From Cyanophora paradoxa CCMP329 (taxonomy: Eukaryota > Plantae > Glaucophyta): a stretch of DNA of 64,000 bases. The stretch covers positions 310,001-374,000 of the forward strand of contig QPMI01000015.1 in the NCBI GenBank assembly GCA_004431415.1, read 5' to 3'. The notes beneath the pieces are model-generated. The model did not search any database, was not told the origin of the DNA, and saw only the letters and a list, made by a program, of their open reading frames with translations. Both the position numbers and the translations under genes were made by a program. Shown in pieces: positions 45,924 to 61,200 of this stretch (position 1 is the stretch's first letter; each line of letters starts with the position of its first letter).

Positions 45924-48900
45924 ATGGCACCGCACTTCGCTACAGCCCCGTCGCGCGGCGTGCCGGGCGTGACCGACCGGTGGATACCGCCTGCCTCGCC
46001 GCCGCGCCAGCTCGAGCGCCAGCCTGAGAGCGACGGACTGCACGGGGACAGAAAGAGGTCACGCAGCTCGTCGCGTCCACTTGAAGGGGAGCGCGGCAGA
46101 TCTAGATCCCGCCCGCGCGAAGGCCAGAACGAACCTTCGAGACGCTCGGTGCGCGACGCCGCTCGTATCTGAGCGGCGCAAACTGGATCTAAAGCTCACG
46201 TACGCGCTCGTTCTTCTCAGCGTTCTCGGCCTCGCGAGTCGCGGCATAGCCGCTCCCCTTCGCCTCGCGCACGATCGGCCTCGCGGCCGCGAGAGGCCTC
46301 CAGGCCGCGCGAAAGCTCGCGGCCGCGGCCCCCTTCGCAGCACTCGCAACGTCGAGATGCCGTGAGCCCCCCGGCATCCTCGAGCCGGCCGGGGATCGGG
46401 CGATCTCTCTCCCGGCCCGTCTCGCGCGGCCCCACGGAGGAGGCCCGGGTCCGGCCTCCTTCGCGGGGATACGTGGAGGAGTCTCGCAGTCGGCCCGCAT
46501 CGCGGGGGCCGCCGGTCGACGACGAAGGCCGGGGCCGGCCCTTGCCTCGGGGTCCGGAGGAGCGACCGCGGGGCCCGAGCCAGCCCAGGCCCCCGAGCCA
46601 GCCGCGGCCGCCGTCCCGGCCGGCCCCTCCGGAAGGAGATCGGAGGAGCCCGGGTCGCGGCGCCTCGCGTCCTCGGTCGCGAAGCCGCAGCCACAGCCGC
46701 AGCCGCAGCCGCAGCCCCGTCCGGAGCCGCTCGCGATCGCACGGGGCGCCGCGCACGCCGCGGCTGCGCCCGGCCGAGCGGGAGGCGCTCAGCGCGGCGG
46801 CGCAGGCCGCACGCGCCATCGAACGGAAGTTGAAGCGGCAGGGCTCGCCCGACTCGGGTCCGCGCAGATGCCCCCCGCCCCCGCCCCCGCCCCCGCTCAA
46901 CTGCGCGCAGGGGACGAGGCGCGGCGGCGGAAGCGGGCGGCGTCGTCGGGGCGGGACTCGGAGGCGGGGCGGAGCGTGGCGGGGGACGGTGAGGACTGCG
47001 TGGCCGTCATAGTCGGAGACGAGGACGGCGACGACTCGCCCCTCCCGCCCTCGCCGGTCTTCAAGCCGCGCCCGAGCGCCCCCAAGAAGCCCGCAGACGA
47101 CGAAGAGCCCCTGTGGCGGCCGGCCCCGCTCCGCCCGGGGGCCCCCGCCCGCTCCGCATCGCCCCCGCCCCACGCCCCGGGCTCCTCCGAGCCCGATCGC
47201 GCCAAGTCCCCCCCGGGCGTCGCCGAGGCGGCCGCCGCCCCTCCCCCCGCCGAGCTGCCCCCCGCCGCTTCCTCTTCTTCTTCCGCCCCTTCCGCCCCTT
47301 CCGCCCCCGCGCCGCCCCCGTGGGCGCGCAGCCCGCCGCCGCTGCCCTCGGCGCCGCCGCCGGGTTCGGGGGCGCCAGCGGCCACCTTCAGCAAGATGCT
47401 GCAGTCCGGGGGCGGGGCGGAGGCGCGCGCCCCCGGCGCATCAACCTCCGGCACCGGATCCGCCGGCAACAGCCCCGTACCCCTCCCAGGTGCGCTTCTC
47501 CCTCCCCTTCTTCACCCCATCTTCTCGCCCCGGTCCGACCGAGCGCGCGCAGTGGTGCCGAAGCCGTCGGCGTGCCCCGCGCCGAAGGCGGCGCCGAGCA
47601 CGGGCAAGGCGGCGTCCCTAGCGACGGCGGCGAGGGTGGCCGGCATCCCCACCATCACCTCCGTGGGCGTCAACTACTACGGGCCGCCCCCCGCCTACGA
47701 CTACTCCTCCTACTACGCCTACTACAGCATGTACTACGGCCAGCAGCCCGGCTGGGAGGCGCGCCGCGCCGTACCCCCCGCGACCCCTTTCCCCTCCTGA
47801 CAAGCGCGCAGGAGTACGCGAAGTACTACGCGCAGCAGTCGATGTCGGGCAAGGGCACCCCCAGCGCGGGCGGTCCCCCTCCCGCCCCGCCCGCGTCTGC
47901 GTCCTCCGCCCCCGCCCCCGCTCCCGCCCCCGCCCCGACCGCCGCCTCCGTCAAGTCTCCGCGCCAGCAGGCGCCGTCCGCCCCCCCTCCGCCTCCGCCC
48001 CCGCCGCCGCCCCCGGCGCAACCCCCCTCGGAGCACGCAACCGACCCCGCCCCGGCCGACGACGCCGCCGCGGCCGCTTCTGCGGCACCAGCAGCAGCGG
48101 CGGCAGCGGTAGAGACGGCGCCGTCCGCATTCGCCTCGGCCCCGCTCCCCGCCACCCCGCCTCCTGCCGCCCCGGCTCCAGAGCCCTACCACCCCGAGTT
48201 CCCCTCCGCGTTCGAAGGCGACGCCTCCGCCCCGCGGCCCGCCCCGCAGGGCAGCAGCATCAGCTCGTCCGAGGTCCGCCCAGCCGCGCGCCCCTTGCGC
48301 TCTTCGGGTGGCCCGCTCAAACGCGCCGCGCCGCGCAGCCGGCGACGGGCGAGGGTCACTACCCCGCGGAGCTCCCGCCGGCAGAGGTGGCGGCGGTCGA
48401 GATGGAGATGGAGGAGGAGGAGGAGCGCGGCGGCTGGCGCGAGGTGGTGGCGCGTTCAGACGACCCCTACGTCCGTCCTTCCGCCCTGCAGCTCACTCCC
48501 CCGCAGATCGCGCCGGCCGTGCCAGGGCCCGCCCCCCAGCCCGCAGCTCCTGAGCAGGAGAAGGCGGCGGAGGAGGGCGCGGGCCCGACGCAGGCCGAGG
48601 TGGCGCTGGCGGGCGAGGTGGCCCGCCTGGAGGCGGAGAACGCGCAGCTGCGCAGCGACCTCCGCCGCGCCCGCGAGGTCCGTACCCCCTTACACGAATC
48701 TCGGCCTGTCGGCGCCGGTCAGACGCGCGACCGCGCGCCTGCAGGACGGGGAGGCGGCGCGGCGCGAGCTGGACGCGCTGTGCGGGGCGGGGGACGCCTG
48801 CGGCGACCCGTACGGGTGCGCCCGGCGCCGTCCTTTAGCCGCCCGCCCGCGCGCACGCCCTTTCGGCGGCCTTTTTGACGGCCCGGCGCGCAGCGGGGCC

Positions 48901-49152
48901 GAGGAGGGGGCGGTCTCGCTGGACCGCCTGGAGGCCATCCACCTCTCCGGCATCGCCCGCGTCCTCGCCGCCCGCGTGCGCCGCCCCCGCCCCCGTACCC
49001 CCCCCCAAAAAAGCTTTCTTTTTCGGCGTGTTCTGATGCACGTACCCCCGCAGCGCGCGAACCACGAGGCGGACGTGGCACGTCTGACGGCGGCCGCGGC
49101 GGCCGCCGCCGCGGGGGCCGTGCCCCACCGCTCAGGCTCCGGCCCGCACTGA
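45924..49152 (+). CDS. Low-complexity RS/Pro-rich protein with Tyr-rich motif and C-terminal coiled coil; function unknown, possibly RNA processing
   Basis: RSRSRSHSRSRSRSP, YDYSSYYAYYSMYYGQQPGWE-EYAKYYAQQ and LEAENAQLRSDLRRARE, with plausible introns between blocks. Boundaries are approximate. Confidence 0.55.
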
Positions 49153-49262
49153 GGCGCCCCCGTCCCTTTCTCCTAAACGCAGTTATCGAACTAGCGCTGT
49201 GCGCGCTTTTACATAAAAACTTTCAAATGTGTCGTCGATGCTGCCCGAAGGATAGGAGGGGC

Positions 49263-50045
49263 TCACGAGTGGGGGTCGGCGGGCTGGCGGATGAGGCGGA
49301 GGCCGTGGGGCAGCGCGGTCATGACGGCGCCCAGGTTCTCCTTCACCGCCTTCGGGGAGCCTGCGGGGTACGTAGCTATCGTCAGCTGGGCTCGCGATCG
49401 GGCGCGGCGCGCGCGGGCGGCGGGCGAGGGCGCACCGGGCAGGTTGAGGATGAACGTCTCCTTGCGGATGCCCGCCGCGGGCCGGCTCAGGATCGCCATC
49501 GGGGTCGCCTGCGCATACACGCGTTCGTTTGAACGGAGAAACACGCAACCGCTTGAGAACGCTTCAGAGGCGCGCCTGCAGGCCGGCGTTGATCATCGCG
49601 ATGACGAAGCCTGGCGCTTCCCTGTCCAGCACGCCCTTCGTCGCCTCCGGCGTCTGGTCCCGCGGCTGCGCGCACTTGTCAGCTGCAGCTCCGCTTTCAA
49701 TGCGAAGCGCTGCGGAGGCCGGGGGCGCGCCGTGAAGCCCGTGCCGCCAGTTGTGAGGATCAAATCCAGCTTGTCGACGTCCGACCAGGCCACGAGCACC
49801 TCTTGTATGCGCTGCACATCGTCCGGGACGACAGCAGTGTGCACAACCTGCGCGAAGCGCGCGTACGCGCCTCGATGACAGAAACGAGCGCGCGGGACTC
49901 GGGATGCCCTGCGGACCTGGGCGCCCGGGAGCCCCTGCGTGATCAGCTCGACGCAGGCTGGCCCGCTCTTGTCCTCGGTCTCGCCTTTAGCTGTGCGATC
50001 GCTGATCGTAAGGACGCCGACTCGAAACCCGCCGGCGGCCGCCAT
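49263..50045 (-). CDS. CNX1G: Molybdopterin adenylyltransferase, stand-alone G-domain (MogA/CNX1G)
   Basis: VGVLTISDR...EDKSGP, VVPDD, DLILTTGGTGFT-PRDQTPEAT, AILSRPAAGIR, ILNLP-GSPKAVKENL; stop at 49263. Confidence 0.93.
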
Positions 50046-50852
50046 TCCTCTTTCTTCGCGTGCGCCTTCCTTCGGCGCTGCCTGAGGGCGAGCTTCGGTC
50101 GATCGAGCTGCCGATGATGATCTGCCGGGGCTGACCCTACACGGTTCGCGGTTCGCGTACCCGGCAGTCCAAGTCATCCACGGGACCGGTGCGACCAGCG
50201 CAGCGCAGCCGGGCCGGGGAGGGACGATCCGAGTCGCTCGTGCAGTCGAAGGACACCACAGGAAGAGTTTGTGAGCCTTTCGTGCCCAGGTGAATGCTGC
50301 GCTCCTTGAGCGAATGCGCGTGCGGTGGTTCTGGCCATGAGCGGCGTCGCCCGATGCGCTAGTCTGTTCTAGAAAGCTTGATCGTACGCATCGTGGAAGA
50401 TAGATATGCCGCCGCGCGCTCGGTCGACCGCGAACGCCATCCTGTCATCCGGCCAGTTAACGCGCCCGAAGCTCGAAGGCTGATAGATAGAAATATGACG
50501 TCGACAGCCAGACTCGTGCCGCGCGTTCGCGCGCCGCGCGCGCCTCCCCGGCGCTCTTACACGTCGCCCCGGCGCGCGCCGGCGCATGCGCAGGCCCCCA
50601 CGCGTACGGCCGCGACCGGTCATCACGCAACGTGCACGTGAGCAAGGTGCGCGTACGTGAGCGCGTACGCTTGCGAAGTTCGCGCAGATCTAGATCTAGC
50701 TCGCCGTCGAGCTCGATTGAGCGCTAGCCCGCGTTCAAATGGCGCGGGCGCCGGCGCGCGCGCAATTGCAATTGCAACTGCAAGGCGAAGGGCGGAGCTT
50801 AGAGTAAAAGGCTGTAAGTTGACTGCAATTGGCGCAGCAGATATCGATCGCG

Positions 50853-53800
50853 ATGTCGACGCCAGGGGCGCCCGCGCCGTCGCAAGGAGAAGGCCAAGGC
50901 CTCGCATCGAATTCGAACGGTGCAAGTTTGAAGTCAGCCGCTTCCAGCTCGCGATCGATGGCGACATCGAGCTCGCTGGCGGTCGCGGCCGTCGCTGGTG
51001 AGCGACTGCAGGCCCAAGCTTCAGTCGCCGCGGGTGGCCGTGGCATTTCATCCTGGCACATCGATATCAACCCACATCGACAATTGCAATTGCAAACTGC
51101 TCTTCATGATCATGATCATGATAGCAATCAGAGCACGTGCACGCCCCAGCGCGTTCACCCCGTCCCTCATGACGCCCTTTTGCATGCGCATGCGGTGCCC
51201 TCTTTGAAGAACATCATCGCGATCGATTGCACTTTAATCTAATTCTTCGATGTTGCAGGTATCAGGCACAAGCTCAAGGAGCCCTCATGGCCATGATCAC
51301 GGGCCCGCGGCCAAGCCAATGACATCTGATGTTAACGTTGCTGCTTCTGCTGCTACTGCCACTAACGTGCGAGATAAAACCTACTTCTGGTGGGGCTCCC
51401 GCTCAAAAAATGTCAGTGTCCCTTTTTCCTCTAGAAGTACTAGCTATATATATAGTGTCACTGGCTTATTGTTACTTGCAGTGTCGCACTCCGGCTGCTT
51501 CTAACGCAGAGGAGAGGAATCGGCTGCGAGACGTCTGCATCGTCGCTTGCCAGGAGCTCGACAAGCACGATGGACTCAGCAGCACGCGTACGATCTCAGA
51601 TGGGCTGCTTACGCACCCGCGCTCCGGTACGTATACGGTATTTCTATCGAAGCCTCTGTCCACGAATATTATATTCAAGCTTCTGCTGCTTCATTCACTT
51701 TCCCAACCAGATTACGAGGATCAGGCATTTGTTCGAGCAATCCGCGAGGGGCAGCTCGTTGTGGAGGAAGACGGAGATCCGTGGGATGCTGTGCGGCGCT
51801 TTCTCAAGACCATGGGCTCCGTGCCTCAGAACAGTTGGCAGAAACAACCACGCCTGCGGGAGCCTGGTCAAATTATTGGAATCTCAAAAAGGCCGAATGG
51901 GTATCAGGGCCGCTTTGTATGGCGGCGGCGCGAGGTGCAAGATTTCGTTGCTCAAAATTGTATATTTGAACCTTTGATCGCGTTCACGAGCTTGTCGTGC
52001 AGATGTCGACGACCTGCCGTCCTACGAGTGAAGCACGTTTAATTTGACTGTTTCATGATCATCATATATTATAACTAAAACATAAGCAATATTAATATTC
52101 TCATCTAACGCTTCGAATTGTGCGTAATACAGGAGGCCGTCAGGGCCCGGGACTGCCTCGCCATCATCTGCATGTTTGTCGATGAGAAGACTGGCTGGCA
52201 GCCCCGCCTGCGCGAAGAGATTCTGAACCACCCTCGCTCACGTGCGCCCAAACGCTGAAATTCTAAAGCAAATTAACTCTAAGCGCCATCTCCAGGGTAC
52301 GAGGGTGATCATGAGAGCTTCTACGCCGCCCTGCAACGGGGCAAGTTCAAAATCCCGACCAGCTCGAGCTCGTCACCCAATTCAGCCCAAGATCAAGTCG
52401 ACTTTCACGCTCTCGTTTATGCTTTCTTTGAGCGACATGGTGGGCCGCTGAAGCCGGTGGGGGTTTTTATTCAATTCAAATTTAGATTAAAACAATGTTT
52501 GTGTTTTTTTCTCTTTTTCTGGACTGACGCATTAGCAGTCCGGGGGATCCACGCGCACGTTAGGCGCACGATGTGACTCAAAAAAAACAGGAGCTAGCGC
52601 TGCAAACTGTATTCAAACGCCAAAAACGGGTTTGTTCGAGTATAAATCCGCGGGAGTAGCGCTGACCAATATAATCCTGACCGCAGAGTCGAAGCTCAAG
52701 GTTGCGAGTGCTTTGAAATCAAAGAGTCAGGGCGGGAGGCCTTCGACCACAGGCTTCAGGGGAATCCATCGCGATCGCAGATCACGCGGCGGCTTACGAG
52801 GATCATTCAAGTGGCGTGGTCAGACGTTCAAATTTGCATGTCCCTCCGCGTGCGACCCTGAGGTCAGTGCCAAAATTAATTTTATATTGTATATACGTAG
52901 CTCGATTGTTGCGGATTGAAGCCGTTGGTTTCAAATTCCCTATTTCTCAGGAAGCTGCTCGAATTCTTGACCGCTTCATCATCACCTGCCAGGAGCTGGA
53001 CAAGCTCACCAAACGGCCCCCGGAACAGCGTATCTCGGATTCGAAGTTGAACTTTCCTCGCGAGGGTGCGAGTTTGCAATTGATCGACATCATGAGCTGA
53101 CTTTAATTTGCACAGCTACAGCGATCTAGATCTCACAGCTTTTGGGGTTTCGCGCAGAGTATGCCAAGGAGGAATTCTTCGACCTTTTGCAGCGCGGGAA
53201 GCTGGCTGGGTATGTGAAGGAGCATGAGACCGCACCTGCAGCTGGTCATGAATTCGAAGAACTCGACAACCTGCGTGAGGCTGTGCGGCATTTTCTCAAG
53301 GATTGCGGGGTCATCAAAAGATTCGTTCGCAAGGTTCGCATACGTCTGTGCATGCGGTTTCGCGCAATTTGCAATCTGCCATAATGCTCTCCTCTCTCGA
53401 TCATGATCAGCGGACACGCGCTCGGAGCGACGCGGAAGAAGAGGAGGACAAGGAAGAGGACGAGGAAGAGGACGAGGACGAGGAGGACGAGGACGAGGAG
53501 GACGAGGACGAGGAGGACGAGGAGGAGGAGGACGAAAACGAGGACGGAGATGGGGACCGCATACGCGCTCGTTCTCGAGTGGGGCAGTCTGGCTACCACT
53601 GTGTCCTTCGGTTCAAGAAGCGATTCTGGCGCGGGAAGTTCATGTGGCGCCGTGAATACTTCTCTTCGGCATCTTCCCTCGATCCAAAGGTTTGCCGAAC
53701 GTCAACGCGATCTTTTGAAGTTTATACATTGCAGAACCTGTGGCGCTCTTGCGTCTGATTGCTTTCGCGCAGGACGCAGCCCAGTTCCGCGACCGGGCGA

Positions 53801-56800
53801 TCATCTGCTGCCAGTGGCTCGACAAGCACGAGGGGATCCCAGAAACGTCCCGCATTCCAGACGCCCAACTGAATTTCAAGCGTTCCAGTGCGCATGCATT
53901 CAAAGCTCAAGATCTGAATTAAATCTGCAGTCGCCTGTTAAATATAAGATTATGCACACATATTTTATATATTTCTGTATGCACACACGTCGTCAATCTC
54001 TATTGAATATGCTTCGAATGCGCAGAGTACGAAAAAGAGAAGTTTTACCTCGACCTGCACGCTGGGAAGCTGGAGGGTTACGTCGAGACTTCCGAAGACG
54101 CCAAAAGCTACCGCAAGAGGATACGCAAGTTCCTTGCCAACCGTGGAGCCTACCAAACACGCGCACGCGTGCGCCCGGCTCGGCTAGCGCTGCGCATCCA
54201 CATACGCATGCGGAACCTTGACATCAATGCTGACGCCCCTGCAGTCTACAGTCCAGCCTTCGACCGCGAGCAAGGACGAAGAATCGGGCGAACTCGAGGC
54301 GACTCAGGTCGACGAATGCGAGGATGATGAGGACGGTGATGGGGACGAGGAGGCTGGATCTTCGGCTGACGAGGCGGAATCTTCGGCTGACGAAGGTGAT
54401 CATGAACTGGGCCAACACATGTTGAATGCATGACGAAAATTAAATAATTTCCTCGTGCTTACTTGCGTGTCCGATCAAGATGAAATCATCTTCAAAGGAA
54501 TTCGGAGAGACAAGCGCGGCTTTCCAGGCTACTTTGCCTGGAGAGATATGCAGTTCTCAACGCCAGGAGTGTCCTCCACCATGGAGGTGCGCATCCTAGG
54601 CCTTTTAATTTGTGCAAACCCCTAGGCCTGCAGGCTTCTCTGCAATTTCCACCCTCGACTAACAGTGTCTACGGCAGGAAGCCGCACGGCTCCGTGACCG
54701 CCACATGGTCACATGTCAGTACCTCGACAAGGCGCAGCGCATCCGGCCCATACTTACGTGTGACTCAATGAACTTCCCCAAAAACGGTACGCATGCGATC
54801 TCTTGCGACACTTATCTTTACTTACTTAGCTTTCCTTATCTTCTAGCTAATAATATAATCTTCCCCGCGTGAGCAGACTACAAGGAAGAGCCGTTCTTCA
54901 AGGAGCTGCAGCGCGGGAAGCTGAAGGCGCCCAAGGGCAAGGCGACGTACGCGGCCGCCCGCTGCGTCCGCGAGTTCCTCGCCGAAATGGGAGTGGCCCC
55001 GTATCCAAAGGCGCGTCTGTACATGCACGCGTCTGTACATGCATGCATGTTTCTCGAACCTGCAAGTTTCAGATCGCGATCGCAATGCTGACGGCAGTTT
55101 GTTATAAATTACAGCGCCCCAAGGCCGCAGCGGTTGCCACACTGGGAGGCAGTGCACGCGCAGAGGACGAGGAATCATCGTCTGATGAGGAAAGTGATGA
55201 TGAGAGCTTCGCAGGCCACCAAAACAATCCCGAGGACGAAGCGACGGGTGTGTCAAGGCGATTTCGATGCCATTAATACTACTTCCTCGTCGAATGTGAA
55301 AACGTTATCCTAAGCTTCGGTTTGTTTGGCAGCGGCTATCAAGGCGCACTGGCGTGAGCTGCACAGTCGTGGAAAGGTGTGTGCATATGCATGTGATACT
55401 GTGCTTTAATTATATTAATACACTTGCTTGCACAGAAAATAGCGGATTCCGTGGTCAGGCTTGACGGACGATACTACGCGACTTTCTTCCTTGAGAACGA
55501 GAAGGCGCGCGATTAGATTCCTAGAATTTCCTCTTCCAAGGATTTTCTGACCCCCCGACGCCGCAGGCCATCTCGCCGCCACTGGCGTCGGTGGACGACG
55601 CGCTTCACTTCGTCGACCGCTGCCGCATCGCGTGGTGCGGCCCAGACGGCGAGCGCCGCTACGGAATGGAGATCAACATGGACATCGAAGGTCACCCTTT
55701 ATCTTTTGATGCGATATCCATCATGGCATGGCAATACATATATACACACTATCTGCTCCTGTTCGTGTCTTATCTCACGAGCCATGCCGGTGCCCCAACA
55801 GATTACACGTCGGAGGCGTGGTACCAGAGGCTCTTCGAGGGGCCGGAGGGGCAGCGGCCGAAGGTGGGAGACAACGACCCCGACTGGAATGCGGACCACG
55901 CGGCCGCCGTCCGGCGCACCGTCGCCTTCGTTGTCGAGGCCGAGCTCGAGGTGGAGTCCTTTTATGATATCTACATCTCTCTGACTGTTTAGGCCTAGGT
56001 CTCTTTGCATCTGTGCCCGGGTATTGCCTGTGCTGATTTGCTTTGTGCAGCTCCGTGCACGCGAGCAAAAGGATGCCGGCGCGGCCGCAGGGGGCGGGGT
56101 TGCGGGTGCACTGGCGGCCACAGCAGGCGAGGAAGGTGCAAGCTCTGGATCCGCGCCGGCGCTTCTGTCGGCCGCGGACAGTGGGGTTGCCGCAGCCGCC
56201 GGCGGCGATCGCGAGACGCATGAGCCAGCCCTGCGACCAGCCAAAAAGCAGAGACTTGCAGCCGTAGACGGCGACACCCCAACAGGCACTCAAGCCGCTG
56301 ACAAAGCCAAGGGCCGCGGCCGCGCTAGCGATCAACAGCCCGCAAAGAAGCAGAAGACAGCCGGCGCCGCTGCCGCGGGCACCAAACAGACGCCTCGCGC
56401 CTCTCCTGCAGCTGAAGCCGCCCCCTCTAGCCACAGAGAGGCAGCTGCAGCTGCAGCTGCAGCTGCTCCCAAGCCAGCCGCAGCGCCGATTAATCCCGCC
56501 CCGCCGGTGCCTCCCGTGGAGGCAGGGCCCCCTGCAGCTGCTCCTGTGCCTGTGCATGTGGCCAGCCCCGCGGTAGCCCCCGAAGCAGCCGGGCAGGCGG
56601 TCGCGAGCGCGAGCGGGCCTCCCGCCCCGAAGCACAACCCGAGCGCGGTGCGCCCAAGCCCCCTGAGTCCTCTGGATTTAAAGCGTCCAGTTCCAGTGCT
56701 GCAACACTTGCATTCCTGACCATAATCGTCTCTGCAGCTGCTCGAGTGGGAGGCGCCGGAGGTGCTCCAGTGGCTCGTCGAGCGGCTCGGCCTCAAGAAG

Positions 56801-57447
56801 CAGCCCCGGGCGTGCGCGTGCCGCCGCTCTCCACAACTAAATCTGATTAATTTATCGCATCGCGCTCGTCGCTTCGACGAATTCGTATATATCTTTGACG
56901 GCAAGCGCGCCTTTACGCAGGTGCCGAGTGCTGGGGCGGCTGGCGCTCACGGGCCGCATGCTCCTCATGCGCTCGGCGGCCGGCCTGCGGCCGCGGCTGA
57001 TGAAGAAGCTGGGGGAGGAGATCGCGGAGGGCGGCGCCGACACGAAGCTCGAAGACGTCCTCGAGGCCGCCTTTGAATTCCTCGACGACGAGGCGCGCGC
57101 GTGCTCACGCTCAAGCGCTAGCTAGCTAGCTATAGCCTAGATTTGATTTATGACCGTGCATGATTCCCCCTTCAAGGCTTGACCTTGGAAGCTATTAGTT
57201 TAGCTTCGAATTCCATCTGGCGCTTACGCTGAAATCGAATAGCTTTTAATCACGATCACTTAACATTAAATCACGACCGGTACCTCGATTAAATCCGGCG
57301 CTGGTATACGTACTGGACCGTTACCCCTAGCCATGATCAGTTGACGTTGCGGCGCAGGTCCGGATTCTGGTGGAGGAGGCAAAGGAGGCCGGCGGCGGGG
57401 CGGGTGCCAGCGAGGAGATCGCCCGCCTCTTCTCCCGCCGCGCCTAG
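50853..57447 (+). CDS. Large multi-exon protein with six tandem AP2-like modules, acidic linkers and a C-terminal SAM-like domain
   Basis: Six units resembling (G)FRG..R..G.F.WR....EAAR.RDR.II.CQ.LDK...LNFPR.xY..E.F...LQRGKL...VR.FL...G. The C-terminus reads LLEWEAPEVLQWLVERLGL...LTGRMLL. Splice phases are consistent wherever checked. Confidence 0.75.
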
Positions 57448-57599
57448 CCCCGGCCCCGGCCTAGGCCCAGGCCCGCCGCGAAGCGGTCGCGGCTGAAGCT
57501 GCAGCTTTTGTTTCGAATCAATATTCACAGCTTTGAAATCGAATCGCACGCCTGTGTGCAAGAAGAAATGAAATGGATATCACTTGTAATATAATTCGA

Positions 57600-58160
57600 A
57601 AATTCGCGCAATTCCGCATGCAAGATGGCGCTGAGCTCAGCGCTGAGCTCATGATCAACTACAACGCCTGCAATTATATGTTTCGTGCCTCTAGATCTGC
57701 TGATTGCGATGAGATCCTGTGTCCTTTCCGGGTCCTGTGATCATGATTGCGATCAGCAATTGGATCATGATCATCGGATCATGATTACCATCAATCGCAA
57801 CGGTTGAACGGTTGAACGGACCCTCAGGGCCTCGGAAATCATGTGCTCATGGATTTATGCAATCGGCTTCGAAAGCTCTCAATTGCAACTTTAATTAATC
57901 TGCTTTCAATGCGTATACGTAGCACCATTCTTTAGCTTGACTCTGCAGCACCTCTTGGCCTAGGGCCCCGGCCCGAGTCCTCCCCTCAGCCTGGCAGTGC
58001 ACCAGCAGGTCACTACACCACCACTGGGCCAGCAGCGGCACTGCGGCAGCAGCTCACTGTCTCACCCCCTACATGCATCACAGCTCATGCTGTGGTGCAC
58101 TGCGGCATGTAGAAGAGGGGCATTGCTGAAGAGAACCACCAAGTAAGTGATCATGATTAA
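57600..58160. repeat. Intergenic island with palindromic microsatellites and shared motifs
   Basis: GATCATGATC runs, AACGGTTGAACGGTTGAACGG and CCACTGGGCCA (58021). GCACTGCGGCA and GAAGAGAACCA are also present at 39040-39110. Confidence 0.5.
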
Positions 58161-58215
58161 ATTCTGCGATTCACCGCATCGATATCACACTCAGCGATCC
58201 AGAAGCTATTTCCAG

Positions 58216-61200
58216 CTACCGCTTCCCGCGCTTGCTGGGGAGGGTGGGCCGCAGAGGCCGGAAGGCGGAGGCGGCGGGGGCGCCCGGGGGCGGGGCGGGG
58301 ACGAGGGGCGCGCCGGCCCCGGGGGCCCCGTCCTCCCTGCGGGGGAAGGGCGGCGGGGCGCGGAGGAGGGGCGCGGCGGGGTCCCCGCAGGCCGGCCCCA
58401 CCGCCGCCAGCAGGCCAGCCACGCTCACGCTGGCGACCTGCGCTCGGGCGAGCCGGCGTCAGAACAGAGGAGGATGGAAGAGGCGAGAAACTTCGATGAA
58501 AGGGCGGACGGAGGGGCGTAGGAGAGGACGGCGTCTGTGGCGGATCGCCGGGGCGGGAGGGCGGGCCGGAGGGCCGCCCGCGCCCGCTCCCGCGCCTCGT
58601 CCGCCAGGCGGCGGGCCCGGGCGAGGGACGGCGGGCCGGCGGGCGGCGGGGGCGGCGGGGCCGGCCACACCCGCGAGCGCCACCAGCAGCGACTCCAGCA
58701 CGTCCGCGACCACCTGTACCCTCGGGCGGTCAGGGGTGGGGAAGAGGGGGGGGTAGAGGGACTCGCCTCCTCGACGGGGGCGGGGGCGGGGTCTCGGCGC
58801 CGCTGCGGGAGGGCGGCTGGGGGTGCGGGGCGGGCGGGGCTGGCGGCGCCGGAGGAGGGGCGGAGGGGGCGGGCTGGAGGCGAGGTGCACGGGGAGGGCG
58901 AGGGGCCCCTGCCGCCCCCGCAGCTGCCGCCGCGAGAGCCGCGCCCGCCACCGCCGGCTCGGGCCCCCGCGCGGCAGCCCGGGCCGGGCGGCGACGGACG
59001 CGGCGGCGGGGGCGGAGGCGGGGTCCGGAGCGAGGGGGTCCGGGGGGCGAGGAGCGGGAGGCGCTCGGCGGCGAGGAGGGCGCGGGCGAGGGGCCCGAGG
59101 GCGACGGCGGCGCCCTCGCCGGCGACGCGGAGGCGCCAGGCGCGCTCCGGGCGCGGGCGACGAGGGCGCAGCGGAAGGCGCGCTGCCGGCGGAGGGTGCA
59201 GGCGAGGGTGAAGGCGCCGCGCTCGCCGGGGCCCAGCAGCAGCGCCGCCGGCGCCACCGCGAGCTCCACGTCCCCCAGCGGCCACTCGGGCCCCTCGGGC
59301 GGCGGCCCCGGAGCATCCTGCTCCTCCTCCTCCTCGTCCGCGCTCGACTCTTCCTCATCGGCGTCGTCGTTGTCCGCCTCCTCCGCCGGTACCCCCTCTC
59401 CGTCGGGCGTGCGCCGGCGGCGGCGGCGGCGGCGGCGGGAGGGCTCGAAGGAGAGGGCGAGCGACAGCCCGACCTCGGAGCGGTTCTCGAGCACCACCGT
59501 CCGCCGCACCGCCTGCGCGCCCCGTTAAAGAAGGGAGGAGGAGAAGGGGGGTACAGGTGCCCACCTGGCCGACGGGGAGGACGCCGAGGCCGGCGGTGGG
59601 CGGCTCGAAGCGCACGTCGAGGGCCCCCCCGACGCCGGCCACCGAGACCTGCCCCGCCCCGCCGCCTAAGAAGAGGCGGGCAGGGCAGAGGAGGAGGAGG
59701 AGAAGGAGGAGAAGAAGGGGGGGGGGGGGGGGGGGTACGGACCTCCTTGTAGCGGGCGCGGGCGGCGACGAGGAAGGTCGCGCCCTGCCGCCCCCGGTGG
59801 CCCTCCCCCGGCGCGAACGTCACCTGCCGCCCCCGCATCAGACGCGCCCCAAGCTGGATCCTAGTCTTAATCCCATCGCATCGTTTCTAAGTGTTCGAAT
59901 CGAGTCTGAGTTCTAGAAGCCTTGATCTCGTCTTCTCGATCTTGATCTAGTCTTCTGTCCAGCCTCAGATGCGGGGCGGGGCGCCTGGGGCACCTCGAGG
60001 GGCGCGGAGGCGCGGGGCTCGAGGCGGCCGCGGTCGGGCTGGACGGAGAAGGGCGCCTCGACGGCGGGGACGCTCCACTCAACCGAGACCAGCCCCGTGT
60101 TCCGCACCGATATCTGGCCGAAGCTAAGCCCGAAGAGACGAAGAAAGGAAGGAAGGCGGGCGCGGACGGTGCGGGTGGCGTGGAAGCCGATGGCGGTGAC
60201 GCCAAAGTTGACGAGGGGGGGGTCCACCGCGAACTCGGGGTACGCCCCCTTGCCCGTCACCAGCACGTCCAGCACCCCCACGTTCGACACGATCTGTCAG
60301 GGTGCAGGATTACAGAGGTCTCTTTCGAATCTTTTTCTTTCATGGGAGGGGGGTTACGCGCCTTGATGGAGGAGTGCATCTCGAAGCCGCCGTTGGGGAC
60401 CCAGCGGACCGTGAAGGTCTCCTGGCCGTGCCCGGGGATCGTTCCCTTCAGCGGGTTCACCTGCCCGTTCCCCCGCCGCGTCGGAGGGCGAGAGACGCGA
60501 GGGCAGTGCGGGGGCGGGGGCGGGGTGGGGAGGGGGACGGGCCTTGATGGGGTACACGTGGCGCAGCGTGTACGTGAAGGGGAACCCGCCGTAGTTCTGC
60601 GCCCGCCCGCACGCCCGCCCGCCGCTGCCGTCAGCAGAGTGGAGCGCAGGATCCGCCCGGCCCCCCTTCTCCCAAACTTCTTCTTCTCTGAAAGCGGTCG
60701 GGTGGGGCGGGGGCGGGCCTGGACGACGAAGGAGCGGGTCTGGGGGTCCCCCACGGGGCACGCCCCGAAGGAGACCAGCGCGAACTCCGCCGCCCGCACC
60801 ACCGTCGCGTCGCTGCGGGGCGGGGCAGAGGGCGGCGCTCAGGGGGGAGGAACGGGGAGAGGGAGATCGACTGACAGAGGAGAGATGGGTTGATGGATAG
60901 GGAGGGCAGAGGCCGAAAGGGCCCAGCTAGGTAGGGCGAGGGCAGAGGGGGGGGGGGGGGGGGGGGTAGAGCGCTAAGGGCTTCGAGTGCGCCGAGGGGC
61001 CGGTCTAGAGCAAGACGGCGACGGCGGCAGGCGGGGGGTGCCCGGCTCGGACAGGGAGCTAGAGAGAGAGGGGGCGCGGCTCGGGGCCGCTTGAAAGCGA
61101 GGAGCCGCCTGGGGGCGCGCCTGTGGCCGAAGAGGGCAACAGCGGCGGGCGGGGAGGTGCCCGGCTCGGACATGGAGCTAGAGAGAGGGGGGACATGGAG

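What the first reader, a model, noticed from the sequence alone, without database searches (positions are those of the whole stretch)
50853..57447. Six-module AP2-like array plus SAM-like domain: candidate undescribed modular DNA-binding protein built by exon-module duplication
Seen: after splicing, six ~100-aa units occur at about 51370-51830, 51865-52460, 52740-53335, 53585-54160, 54480-55010 and 55435-55950. Unit 3 reads TTGFRGIHRDRRSRGGLRGSFKWRGQTFKFACPSACDPE|EAARILDRFIITCQELDK...KLNFPRE|EYAKEEFFDLLQRGKL. Unit 5 reads FKGIRRDKRGFPGYFAWRDMQFST...ME|EAARLRDRHMVTCQYLDK...MNFPKN|DYKEEPFFKELQRGKL. All six have a phase-1 intron just before the conserved Tyr, and units 2-5 have a phase-0 intron at the start of the EAAR helix. 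Known: AP2/ERF domains read YRGV..R..W....EEAARAYD.AA.....LNFP..Y and bind DNA through the three-stranded sheet, and plant AP2/ERF proteins normally carry 1-2 copies. Inference: the sheet residues differ between units while the helix and an extra CQxLDK / LQRGKL / VRxFL extension are conserved. That pattern would suit an array in which each unit reads a different motif, and the SAM-like tail could allow polymerisation or repression. The ORF track does not show this gene intact.
Basis: partly seen in the sequence, partly recalled or inferred. Interest (0 to 1): 0.85.

Follow-up and report, generated by a model that had tools for sequence, protein, structure and literature searches.

The report
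Six-AP2-fold, SAM-tailed algal regulator gene
This is a real, heavily spliced gene of the glaucophyte alga Cyanophora paradoxa whose protein strings six very diverged copies of the plant-type AP2 DNA-binding fold in front of a SAM-type self-association domain, a layout found only in a small family in this alga and in no paper I could find, though DNA binding and expression were not tested.

Summary
All six have a phase-1 intron just before the conserved Tyr.

Units 1-5 are significantly alike. Unit 6 is a diverged homolog (hhalign 94.8%, E 5e-8).

The gene is Cyanophora paradoxa model tig00000076_g2412. A profile of the helix exon found only 14 proteins among 1.84 billion. Twelve are Cyanophora paralogs from about seven loci, one carrying an HMG box.

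Pfam AP2 and SAM models match none of them. The predicted structures do support both folds:
- **Unit 4** (pLDDT 91): the only three of 48,161 PDB representatives with Z >= 5 are AP2 domains (WRI1 7.9, TEM1 6.7, AtERF1 5.1). All nearest ESM Atlas clusters are also AP2.
- **Tail** (folded from paralog P0005): it matches almost only SAM/PNT domains (Z up to 7.7).

Units group by array position across paralogs, so the array is older than the gene family.

Best reading: a lineage-specific multi-AP2 DNA-binding regulator with a SAM oligomerisation tail. No RNA evidence was obtained, and DNA binding is inferred.

The scan has met this family before on other DNA of this genome (s1-528618, s1-611676).

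The parts
51319..57447 (+). Whole gene, about 25 exons. It is Cyanophora paradoxa model tig00000076_g2412.t1 (P0001), corrected here at units 2 and 3 and at the 3' end.
   Evidence: Start ATG at 51319 as in P0001, with an alternative in-frame ATG at 51250. Stop TAG at 57445-57447.
51340..51862 (+). Unit 1. Short sheet exon 51319-51411, helix exon 51482-51626, and the tail in exon 51711-51934.
   Evidence: It groups with unit 1 of paralog P0003 (support 100/99). The sheet is shortened and not significantly like the other sheets.
51863..52439 (+). Unit 2. Strands 1-2 at 51863-51934, third-strand mini-exon 52003-52032 (followed by a GC donor), helix exon 52133-52241, tail exon 52296-52439 (or to 52456).
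   Evidence: The continuous exon 51713-51946 aligns colinearly with P0003 residues 87-158 at 55% identity. The public model therefore wrongly splices out 29 residues here.
52740..53333 (+). Unit 3. Sheet in exon ~52591-52862 (5' boundary uncertain), helix exon 52951-53065, tail exon 53158-53333.
   Evidence: The sheet is similar to unit 5 (z 9.3) and to paralog sheets. The public model skips most of this sheet.
53411..53578 (+). Asp/Glu-rich linker, the first part of exon 53411-53689.
   Evidence: Translations. Similar acidic linkers occur in the paralogs.
53579..54168 (+). Unit 4. Sheet 53579-53689, helix exon 53773-53887, tail exon 54026-54168. This is the unit that was folded.
   Evidence: AlphaFold pLDDT 91.3, pTM 0.86. 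AP2 domains are the top structural matches.
54245..54395 (+). Acidic linker exon.
54480..55010 (+). Unit 5. Sheet exon 54480-54586, helix exon 54678-54786, tail exon 54877-55010 (GC donor at 55011, as in the public model).
55115..55247 (+). Acidic linker exon.
55333..55950 (+). Unit 6, a diverged terminal subtype. Lead-in exon 55333-55376, sheet exon 55436-55504 (GC donor at 55505), helix exon 55567-55690, tail exon 55802-55950.
   Evidence: It is 55-88% identical to the same unit in paralogs. hhalign against units 1-5 gives prob 94.8, E 4.9e-8. Its language-model neighbours are AP2 clusters, which is a lead only.
56051..56647 (+). Ala/Pro-rich low-complexity region with two KKQ(K/R) basic motifs that look like nuclear-localisation signals.
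   Evidence: A similar basic motif lies between unit 6 and the tail in paralogs P0002, P0004, P0005 and P0013. The NLS role is inferred.
56738..57447 (+). SAM-fold C-terminal domain. Exons 56738-56811, 56921-57092 (or to 57098) and 57358-57447.
   Evidence: Alignment of six tails has 17 invariant columns. The model of paralog P0005:528-651 has pLDDT 84.3. Its matches are almost all SAM/PNT domains, Z 5-7.7. The last exon is confirmed by paralogs.

Best explanation
The gene encodes a nuclear regulator of about 1,250 residues that belongs to a Cyanophora-specific family.

**Shown here:**
- There are six units. Each has a basic three-stranded sheet, a long helix and a small helical extension.
- The folded unit 4 has the plant AP2/ERF DNA-binding fold.
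- The units are separated by acidic linkers.
- The protein ends in a SAM-fold domain.
- Each array position is a distinct subtype kept across paralogs.

**Inferred:**
- Each sheet lies in the DNA major groove, as in AtERF1 and WRI1. The array would then read a long or composite site, or several sites, with position-specific preferences.
- The SAM tail joins molecules to each other or to partner proteins, raising avidity or allowing spreading.
- The acidic linkers act as activation or auto-inhibition segments.
For: **Gene and family.** The exon chain has conserved intron phases. The public spliced model P0001 and 11 paralogous Cyanophora models are the only real hits among 1.84 billion proteins.

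**AP2 fold.**
- The unit model has pLDDT 91.3.
- An exhaustive PDB structural search gave only three chains with Z >= 5, all AP2: WRI1 7.9 (88 aligned), TEM1 6.7 (87 aligned) and the AtERF1 GCC-box domain 5.1 (60 of 63 aligned). The next chain scores 4.3.
- All seven ESM Atlas cluster rows returned are AP2/ERF or HNH-AP2 clusters. The best is a chlorophyte AP2 cluster at TM 0.62 over 106 residues.

**Sheets.** Complete sheets carry net charge +2 to +7. They are the part that differs most between array positions (22% identity) yet is kept within a position (40%).

**Array age.** Units cluster by position across paralogs.

**Tail.** The tail model matches SAM/PNT domains almost exclusively.

**Paralog context.** Paralog P0007 carries a Pfam HMG box (E 2e-14), which puts the family in a DNA or chromatin setting.
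Against: - No Pfam AP2 or SAM match exists for any family member or any of the 24 units, even at E 10. Sequence profiles hit no AP2 chain in the PDB.
- The structural Z values of 5-8 are middling in absolute terms.
- Only one of the five tail models was confident (84 against 54-66), and it was made on a paralog.
- The gene needs three or four GC-AG introns to stay open.
- DNA binding, nuclear location and oligomerisation are all untested.
Confidence: 0.6

Rival explanations
1. The AP2-fold units are worn-down scaffolds that no longer read DNA sequence. The protein would work through protein-protein or general chromatin contacts, for example as a SAM-linked adaptor.
For: The units are too diverged for Pfam AP2. 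The unit 1 sheet is shortened, and unit 6 has lost most of the shared motifs. The helix and extension are more conserved than the sheet.
Against: Complete sheets stay strongly basic in every paralog. They are conserved within each array position (40% against 22% between positions; tree). That pattern suggests selection on the sheet surface.
Confidence: 0.2
2. The family is cargo or a remnant of a mobile or viral element that carries AP2 domains, as HNH-AP2 endonucleases do, rather than a host regulator.
For: The family is multi-copy and restricted to one lineage. The gene body is GC-poorer (51-61%) than its flanks (73-77%). Bacterial and phage HNH-AP2 clusters appear among the structural neighbours. 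Earlier scan notes report AP2 domains in Fanzor2 elements of this genome (not checked here).
Against: Pfam finds no nuclease, transposase or integrase domain in any member. The gene has about 24 spliceosomal introns with conserved phases. The array order is conserved across paralogs. Plant and chlorophyte AP2 match better (TM 0.54-0.62) than HNH-AP2 (0.39-0.41). No repeats of the units lie elsewhere in the window.
Confidence: 0.08
3. This copy is a silent or decaying paralog, and the open reading chain is partly an artefact of permissive splice choices.
For: No RNA data were obtained. GC donors are needed at 52033, 55011 and 55505. The 3' end needs either a GC donor at 57093 or a GT donor at 57099 that inserts two residues. 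The public model and mine disagree at units 2 and 3 and at the 3' end.
Against: Every exon is open and in phase. GC3 is raised in most exons (0.6-1.0). The disputed exons are conserved at protein level in paralogs. The GC donors share one motif, AG|GCGCG, and three of them were already used by the public annotation.
Confidence: 0.1

Closest known systems
Plant AP2/ERF superfamily, especially double-AP2 WRINKLED1 (PDB 7wq5), the RAV-type TEM1 AP2 domain (7et4/7et5) and the AtERF1 GCC-box domain (1gcc/2gcc)
   Same: Both have a three-stranded sheet packed on a helix. The motifs here resemble the plant ones: a Gly-Ile/Val start of strand 1, an EEAAR-type helix start, and an LNFP-type end. The helical extension after the core superposes on WRI1 and TEM1 over 86-95 residues.
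   Different: No Pfam AP2 match. There are about ten extra residues between the helix and the LNFP-like motif. The protein has a SAM tail and acidic linkers. The family is in a glaucophyte. A recent survey reports AP2 factors absent from all red algae (PMC12567131).
ApiAP2 proteins of Apicomplexa (for example the PF14_0633 AP2 domain, PDB 3igm)
   Same: Both are lineage-specific expansions of diverged AP2 domains, often several per long low-complexity protein.
   Different: The structural match is weaker (Foldseek E 3.1). ApiAP2 domains are detectable by Pfam AP2 (my own knowledge). I know of no SAM tail or position-conserved six-unit array in that group.
SAM/PNT-containing transcription regulators: Yan/TEL (ETS), polyhomeotic/Scm, and the LEAFY N-terminal domain
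   Same: A DNA-binding part is joined to a SAM-fold domain. The tail model aligns to Yan-SAM (Z 6.7), PHC3 SAM (6.7, 69 of 70 residues), Scm (6.3) and the LEAFY oligomerisation domain (5.4).
   Different: The DNA-binding part here is AP2-fold, not ETS, LEAFY or zinc finger. There is no Pfam SAM match. Polymerisation was not tested.
Cyanophora paradoxa paralogs P0002-P0015 (EukProt models on tig00021357, tig00000520, tig00000806, tig00000339, tig00000093, tig00000430)
   Same: They share the same unit types in the same order, the same unit 6 subtype, a basic motif, and the SAM-fold tail.
   Different: Unit number differs per model (1-4), partly because models are split or truncated. P0007 adds an HMG box.

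Membership tests
AP2/ERF domain (Pfam PF00847) | Significant match to the family's sequence profile | tested here: not met
   There was no AP2 hit on 10 full-length family members at E <= 1. There was none on any of 24 single units at E <= 10. Unit profiles hit no AP2 chain in the PDB at E <= 10.
AP2/ERF domain (Pfam PF00847) | Three-stranded antiparallel sheet packed against one alpha-helix | tested here: met
   The model has strands at 11-14, 18-25 and 28-35 and a helix at 38-58, with pLDDT 91.3. AP2 chains are the only PDB representatives with Z >= 5. ESM Atlas neighbours are all AP2 clusters.
AP2/ERF domain (Pfam PF00847) | Conserved YRG and RAYD sequence elements | tested here: inconclusive
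   Alignment A5 shows a Gly-Ile/Val strand 1, a nearly invariant Trp-Arg at the end of strand 2, an EEAAR-x-RDR helix start and an LNFP-like motif. The WLG motif of strand 3 is absent, and the helix-to-LNFP spacing is about 10 residues longer. The comparison with the plant motifs is from memory.
AP2/ERF domain (Pfam PF00847) | Sequence-specific binding to double-stranded DNA through the sheet | not testable with these tools
   Only indirect evidence: complete sheets carry net charge +2 to +7.
SAM / SAM_PNT domain (PF00536, PF07647, PF02198) | Significant match to a SAM sequence profile | tested here: not met
   No SAM family hit on P0001, P0002, P0004, P0005, P0007 or P0015.
SAM / SAM_PNT domain (PF00536, PF07647, PF02198) | Compact five-helix SAM bundle | tested here: met
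   The model of the paralog tail has pLDDT 84.3. Of the 34 PDB rows shown with Z >= 5, about 30 are SAM/PNT domains. Whole small SAM domains are covered: 74 of 75 and 69 of 70 residues. Foldseek's top hits are all SAM. Caveats: four of the five models were poor, and the target was P0005, not the window's own tail.
SAM / SAM_PNT domain (PF00536, PF07647, PF02198) | Homo- or hetero-oligomerisation | not testable with these tools
   None.
HNH-AP2 homing endonucleases | HNH nuclease domain next to the AP2 domain | tested here: not met
   No HNH or other nuclease family in any member. HNH-AP2 clusters are weaker structural neighbours, TM 0.39-0.41.

The most novel reading that the evidence does not exclude
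The family may be a programmable-looking array reader. Six AP2-fold units, each a conserved positional subtype with its own sheet surface, would together read a long composite DNA address, much as zinc-finger arrays do. The SAM tail would then polymerise the bound protein into a spreading, Polycomb- or TEL-like repressive or bridging assembly. If so, multi-AP2 arrays and AP2-SAM coupling arose in glaucophytes independently of the plant AP2/ERF radiation. The AP2 fold would also be older in Archaeplastida than profile-based surveys indicate.
Probability: 0.25. Interest if true: 0.8.

Novelty: new variant of a known kind. Interest (0 to 1): 0.58.

Why it matters
AP2/ERF is counted as a plant and green-algal transcription-factor family, and profile-based surveys find it absent from red algae (PMC12567131). 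This finding shows a glaucophyte holding a family of AP2-fold arrays that such profiles cannot see. That bears on when the fold entered Archaeplastida. It also bears on how far profile-based censuses undercount transcription factors in deep-branching algae.

The layout itself is a testable model for modular DNA reading by AP2 domains. Six position-specific units sit in front of a SAM tail, and one paralog adds an HMG box. I found this pairing of AP2 fold and SAM fold in no paper.

Tried and rejected
- I worked by coordinates afterwards.
- **Single-exon Pfam.** Pfam on single exons gave nothing, because each unit is split over three exons.
- **Joined model left out.** Exons were searched by reference. 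The public spliced model P0001 and its paralogs, returned, served for whole-unit tests.
- **PDB sequence searches.** Profile searches of the PDB found no AP2. The helix profile gave only chance hemocyanin hits. The 24-unit profile gave chance hits only.
- **Homolog search.** The search for homologous proteins with P0005 returned only itself and P0002. Low-complexity words filled the candidate list, so it says nothing about taxonomic range.
- **Literature.** Searches for AP2 in Cyanophora or glaucophytes, for AP2 plus SAM, and for GC-AG introns in Cyanophora found nothing relevant.
- **My first splice guess at unit 2.** I dropped a GTTGCT donor at 51947 in favour of the annotators' mini-exon 52003-52032, which matches paralog P0003.
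The start at 50853 is rejected for lack of support.
Full report
**Observation**

The window is GC-rich and intron-rich. Three-frame translation of 51200-57200 shows short open pieces on the + strand that repeat a three-part pattern. Reading the DNA, I placed GT-AG borders around each piece.

Each unit has three parts:
- a sheet exon;
- a helix exon that starts with an EAAR-like motif and ends with an LNFP-like motif;
- a tail exon that starts one base before a Tyr codon.

All six helix-to-tail introns are phase 1. In units 2-5 the sheet-to-helix intron is phase 0, exactly at the helix start.

Alignments of the three exon types are A1-A3. Against 300 shuffles:
- helix exons of units 1-5 score z 5.7-16.2;
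- tails of units 1-5 score mostly z 4-8, except the unit 1/unit 2 pair (z 1.5, not significant);
- sheets of units 2-5 score z 3.0-9.3.

Unit 6 and the short unit 1 sheet are not significant pairwise. A local tblastn found no other copies in the window.

**How the spliced protein was handled**

Exons were searched one by one, by reference. Single exons gave no Pfam match, which was expected for a domain cut in three.

A profile of the five clear helix exons (A4) was run against 1.84 billion representative proteins. It returned only 14 hits. Twelve are EukProt models of Cyanophora paradoxa. The other two (P0012, P0014) are ENA metagenome proteins whose weak matches are repeats of a 12-14-position part of the profile, so I do not count them as family members.

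P0001 (1160 aa, tig00000076_g2412.t1) is the public spliced model of this very gene. The others come from about six further loci. P0007 also has a Pfam HMG box (E 2e-14). These stored proteins gave me referable whole units.

**Gene model**

P0001 agrees with my exon chain over most of its length. It also adds pieces I had missed:
- a 30-base mini-exon at 52003-52032 for the third strand of unit 2;
- a lead-in exon for unit 6 at 55333-55376;
- GC-AG introns at 52033, 55011 and 55505.

It is wrong in three places:
- It splices 29 residues out of the unit 2 sheet, although the continuous exon aligns colinearly with paralog P0003 at 55% identity.
- It skips most of the unit 3 sheet, which is similar to other sheets.
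- It reads into an intron at the 3' end and misses the last exon, 57358-57447. That exon is 58% identical to the end of P0005.

The start at 50853 is unsupported.

**What the units are**

Pfam finds no AP2 domain in ten family proteins at E <= 1 or in any of 24 excised units at E <= 10. Unit profiles hit no AP2 chain by sequence in the PDB. Membership by sequence profile is therefore not met.

The fold test gives a different answer. With the 24-unit alignment A5, AlphaFold2 folded unit 4 (P0001:425-552) at pLDDT 91.3 and pTM 0.86. The model has three strands, a 21-residue helix and four short helices.

| Search | Result | Call |
|---|---|---|
| Foldseek, PDB | Top six hits are AP2 structures (TEM1 prob 0.99; WRI1). 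AtERF1, a Plasmodium AP2 and AtERF96 rank lower. | 33 |
| VIA alignment, all 48,161 PDB representatives | Only three chains reach Z >= 5, all AP2: WRI1 7.9 (88 aligned, rmsd 2.6), TEM1 6.7 (87 aligned), AtERF1 GCC-box domain 5.1 (60 of 63 aligned, rmsd 2.5). The next chain scores 4.3. | 51 (also 36) |
| ESM Atlas shape search | Only AP2/ERF, RAV and HNH-AP2 clusters. The best is a chlorophyte AP2 cluster, TM 0.62 over 106 residues. | 64 |

The extension after the core therefore also has counterparts in green-lineage AP2 proteins.

The unit 6 subtype is well conserved among paralogs. It is homologous to units 1-5 by profile-profile comparison (prob 94.8, E 4.9e-8, 57 columns). Its language-model neighbours are AP2 clusters, which is a lead only. 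It was not folded.

**The tail**

Six paralog tails align with 17 invariant columns. The complete tail of P0005 folded at pLDDT 84.3 in the best model, but the other four models were poor. Foldseek's top hits are SAM domains.

In the exhaustive search, about 30 of the 34 rows shown with Z >= 5 are SAM or PNT domains. These include:
- TIR-1, Z 7.7;
- Hyphen, Z 7.1 (74 of 75 residues aligned);
- PHC3, Z 6.7 (69 of 70 residues aligned);
- Yan, Scm, L3MBTL3 and TEL;
- the LEAFY N-terminal domain, Z 5.4.

Pfam SAM models do not match. As with AP2, the fold is supported and profile membership is not.

**Evolution of the array**

A maximum-likelihood tree of the 24 units groups them by array position, not by gene.

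| Array position | Support (ultrafast bootstrap / SH-aLRT) |
|---|---|
| Unit 1 | 100/99 |
| Unit 2 | 100/99 |
| Unit 3 | 92/90 |
| Unit 4 | 89/80 |
| Unit 5 | 88/83 |

The array was therefore built before the family multiplied, and each position has been kept as its own subtype. Identity by region:

| Region | Within a position | Between positions |
|---|---|---|
| Sheet | 40% | 22% |
| Helix | 60% | 36% |
| Tail | 47% | 33% |

Complete sheets always carry net positive charge (+2 to +7). This pattern fits sheets that contact nucleic acid with position-specific preferences, but that is inference.

**Mechanism proposed**

By analogy with the solved AtERF1-DNA and WRI1-DNA complexes, each basic sheet would sit in the major groove. 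Six different units on flexible acidic linkers would read a long or composite site, or bridge several sites. A conserved KKQ(K/R) motif in the Ala/Pro-rich region would direct nuclear import. The SAM tail would mediate self- or hetero-association. None of these steps was tested here.

**Rivals**

Three other readings remain open:
- non-DNA-binding scaffold units;
- mobile-element cargo;
- a silent, decaying copy.

The second is weakened by the absence of any nuclease or transposase domain, by about 24 phase-conserved introns, and by better matches to plant than to HNH-AP2 folds. The third needs RNA data to settle.

**Comparison and novelty**

The unit works like an AP2/ERF domain and matches WRI1, TEM1 and AtERF1 best by structure. 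It fails the profile test and has a longer helix-to-LNFP segment. I found no paper that describes AP2 in glaucophytes or an AP2-SAM protein. A recent survey states that AP2 factors are absent from all red algae (PMC12567131).

The scan itself has met this family before on other DNA of this genome. Examples are the HMG-box paralog (s1-528618) and a three-unit giant gene (s1-611676). I rate it a new variant of a known kind: a diverged, lineage-specific AP2-fold family with an unusual six-unit, SAM-tailed layout.

Noticed in passing
window 52033, 55011, 55505, 57093: Three or four of about 24 introns in this one gene start with GC instead of GT. Three of them share the donor motif AG|GCGCG. The public annotation already uses the first three. 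The fourth competes with a GT donor at 57099, which would insert two residues. I found no paper on GC-AG frequency in Cyanophora.
   Followed up: partly
window 50001-58000 against 46001-50000 and 58001-60000: The gene body is much less GC-rich (51-61% per 2 kb; exons 62% overall, N-terminal exons 47-57%) than its flanks (73-77%). GC3 rises from about 0.4-0.7 in the 5' exons to 0.8-1.0 in the 3' exons. The cause is unknown.
   Followed up: partly
window 49596-50177, minus strand: The neighbouring open piece upstream matches the Pfam molybdopterin-binding domain MoCF_biosynth (E 4.6e-12). It is probably an exon of a MoaB/Mog-type gene on the opposite strand.
   Followed up: partly
P0007 (tig00000430_g613), not in this window: One paralog combines two or more of these AP2-fold units, a unit 6-type tail piece, an HMG box (residues 495-563) and the same SAM-fold tail.
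   Followed up: partly
P0008, P0010, P0006, P0011 (tig00000093 g3625-g3628); P0009 + P0002 (tig00021357 g20791-g20792); P0003 + P0013/P0015 (tig00000520 g1808, g1810): Adjacent or nearby public gene models each hold only part of the array. They look like single array genes cut into several models, or tandem copies. The true number of family loci and units per gene needs re-annotation.
   Followed up: no
window 55443-55461, other frame than exon 55436-55504: At the start of the unit 6 sheet exon, a GFRG-type strand 1 motif is readable in a different frame from the one that continues into the conserved sheet. It may be the trace of an old frameshift in this diverged unit.
   Followed up: no
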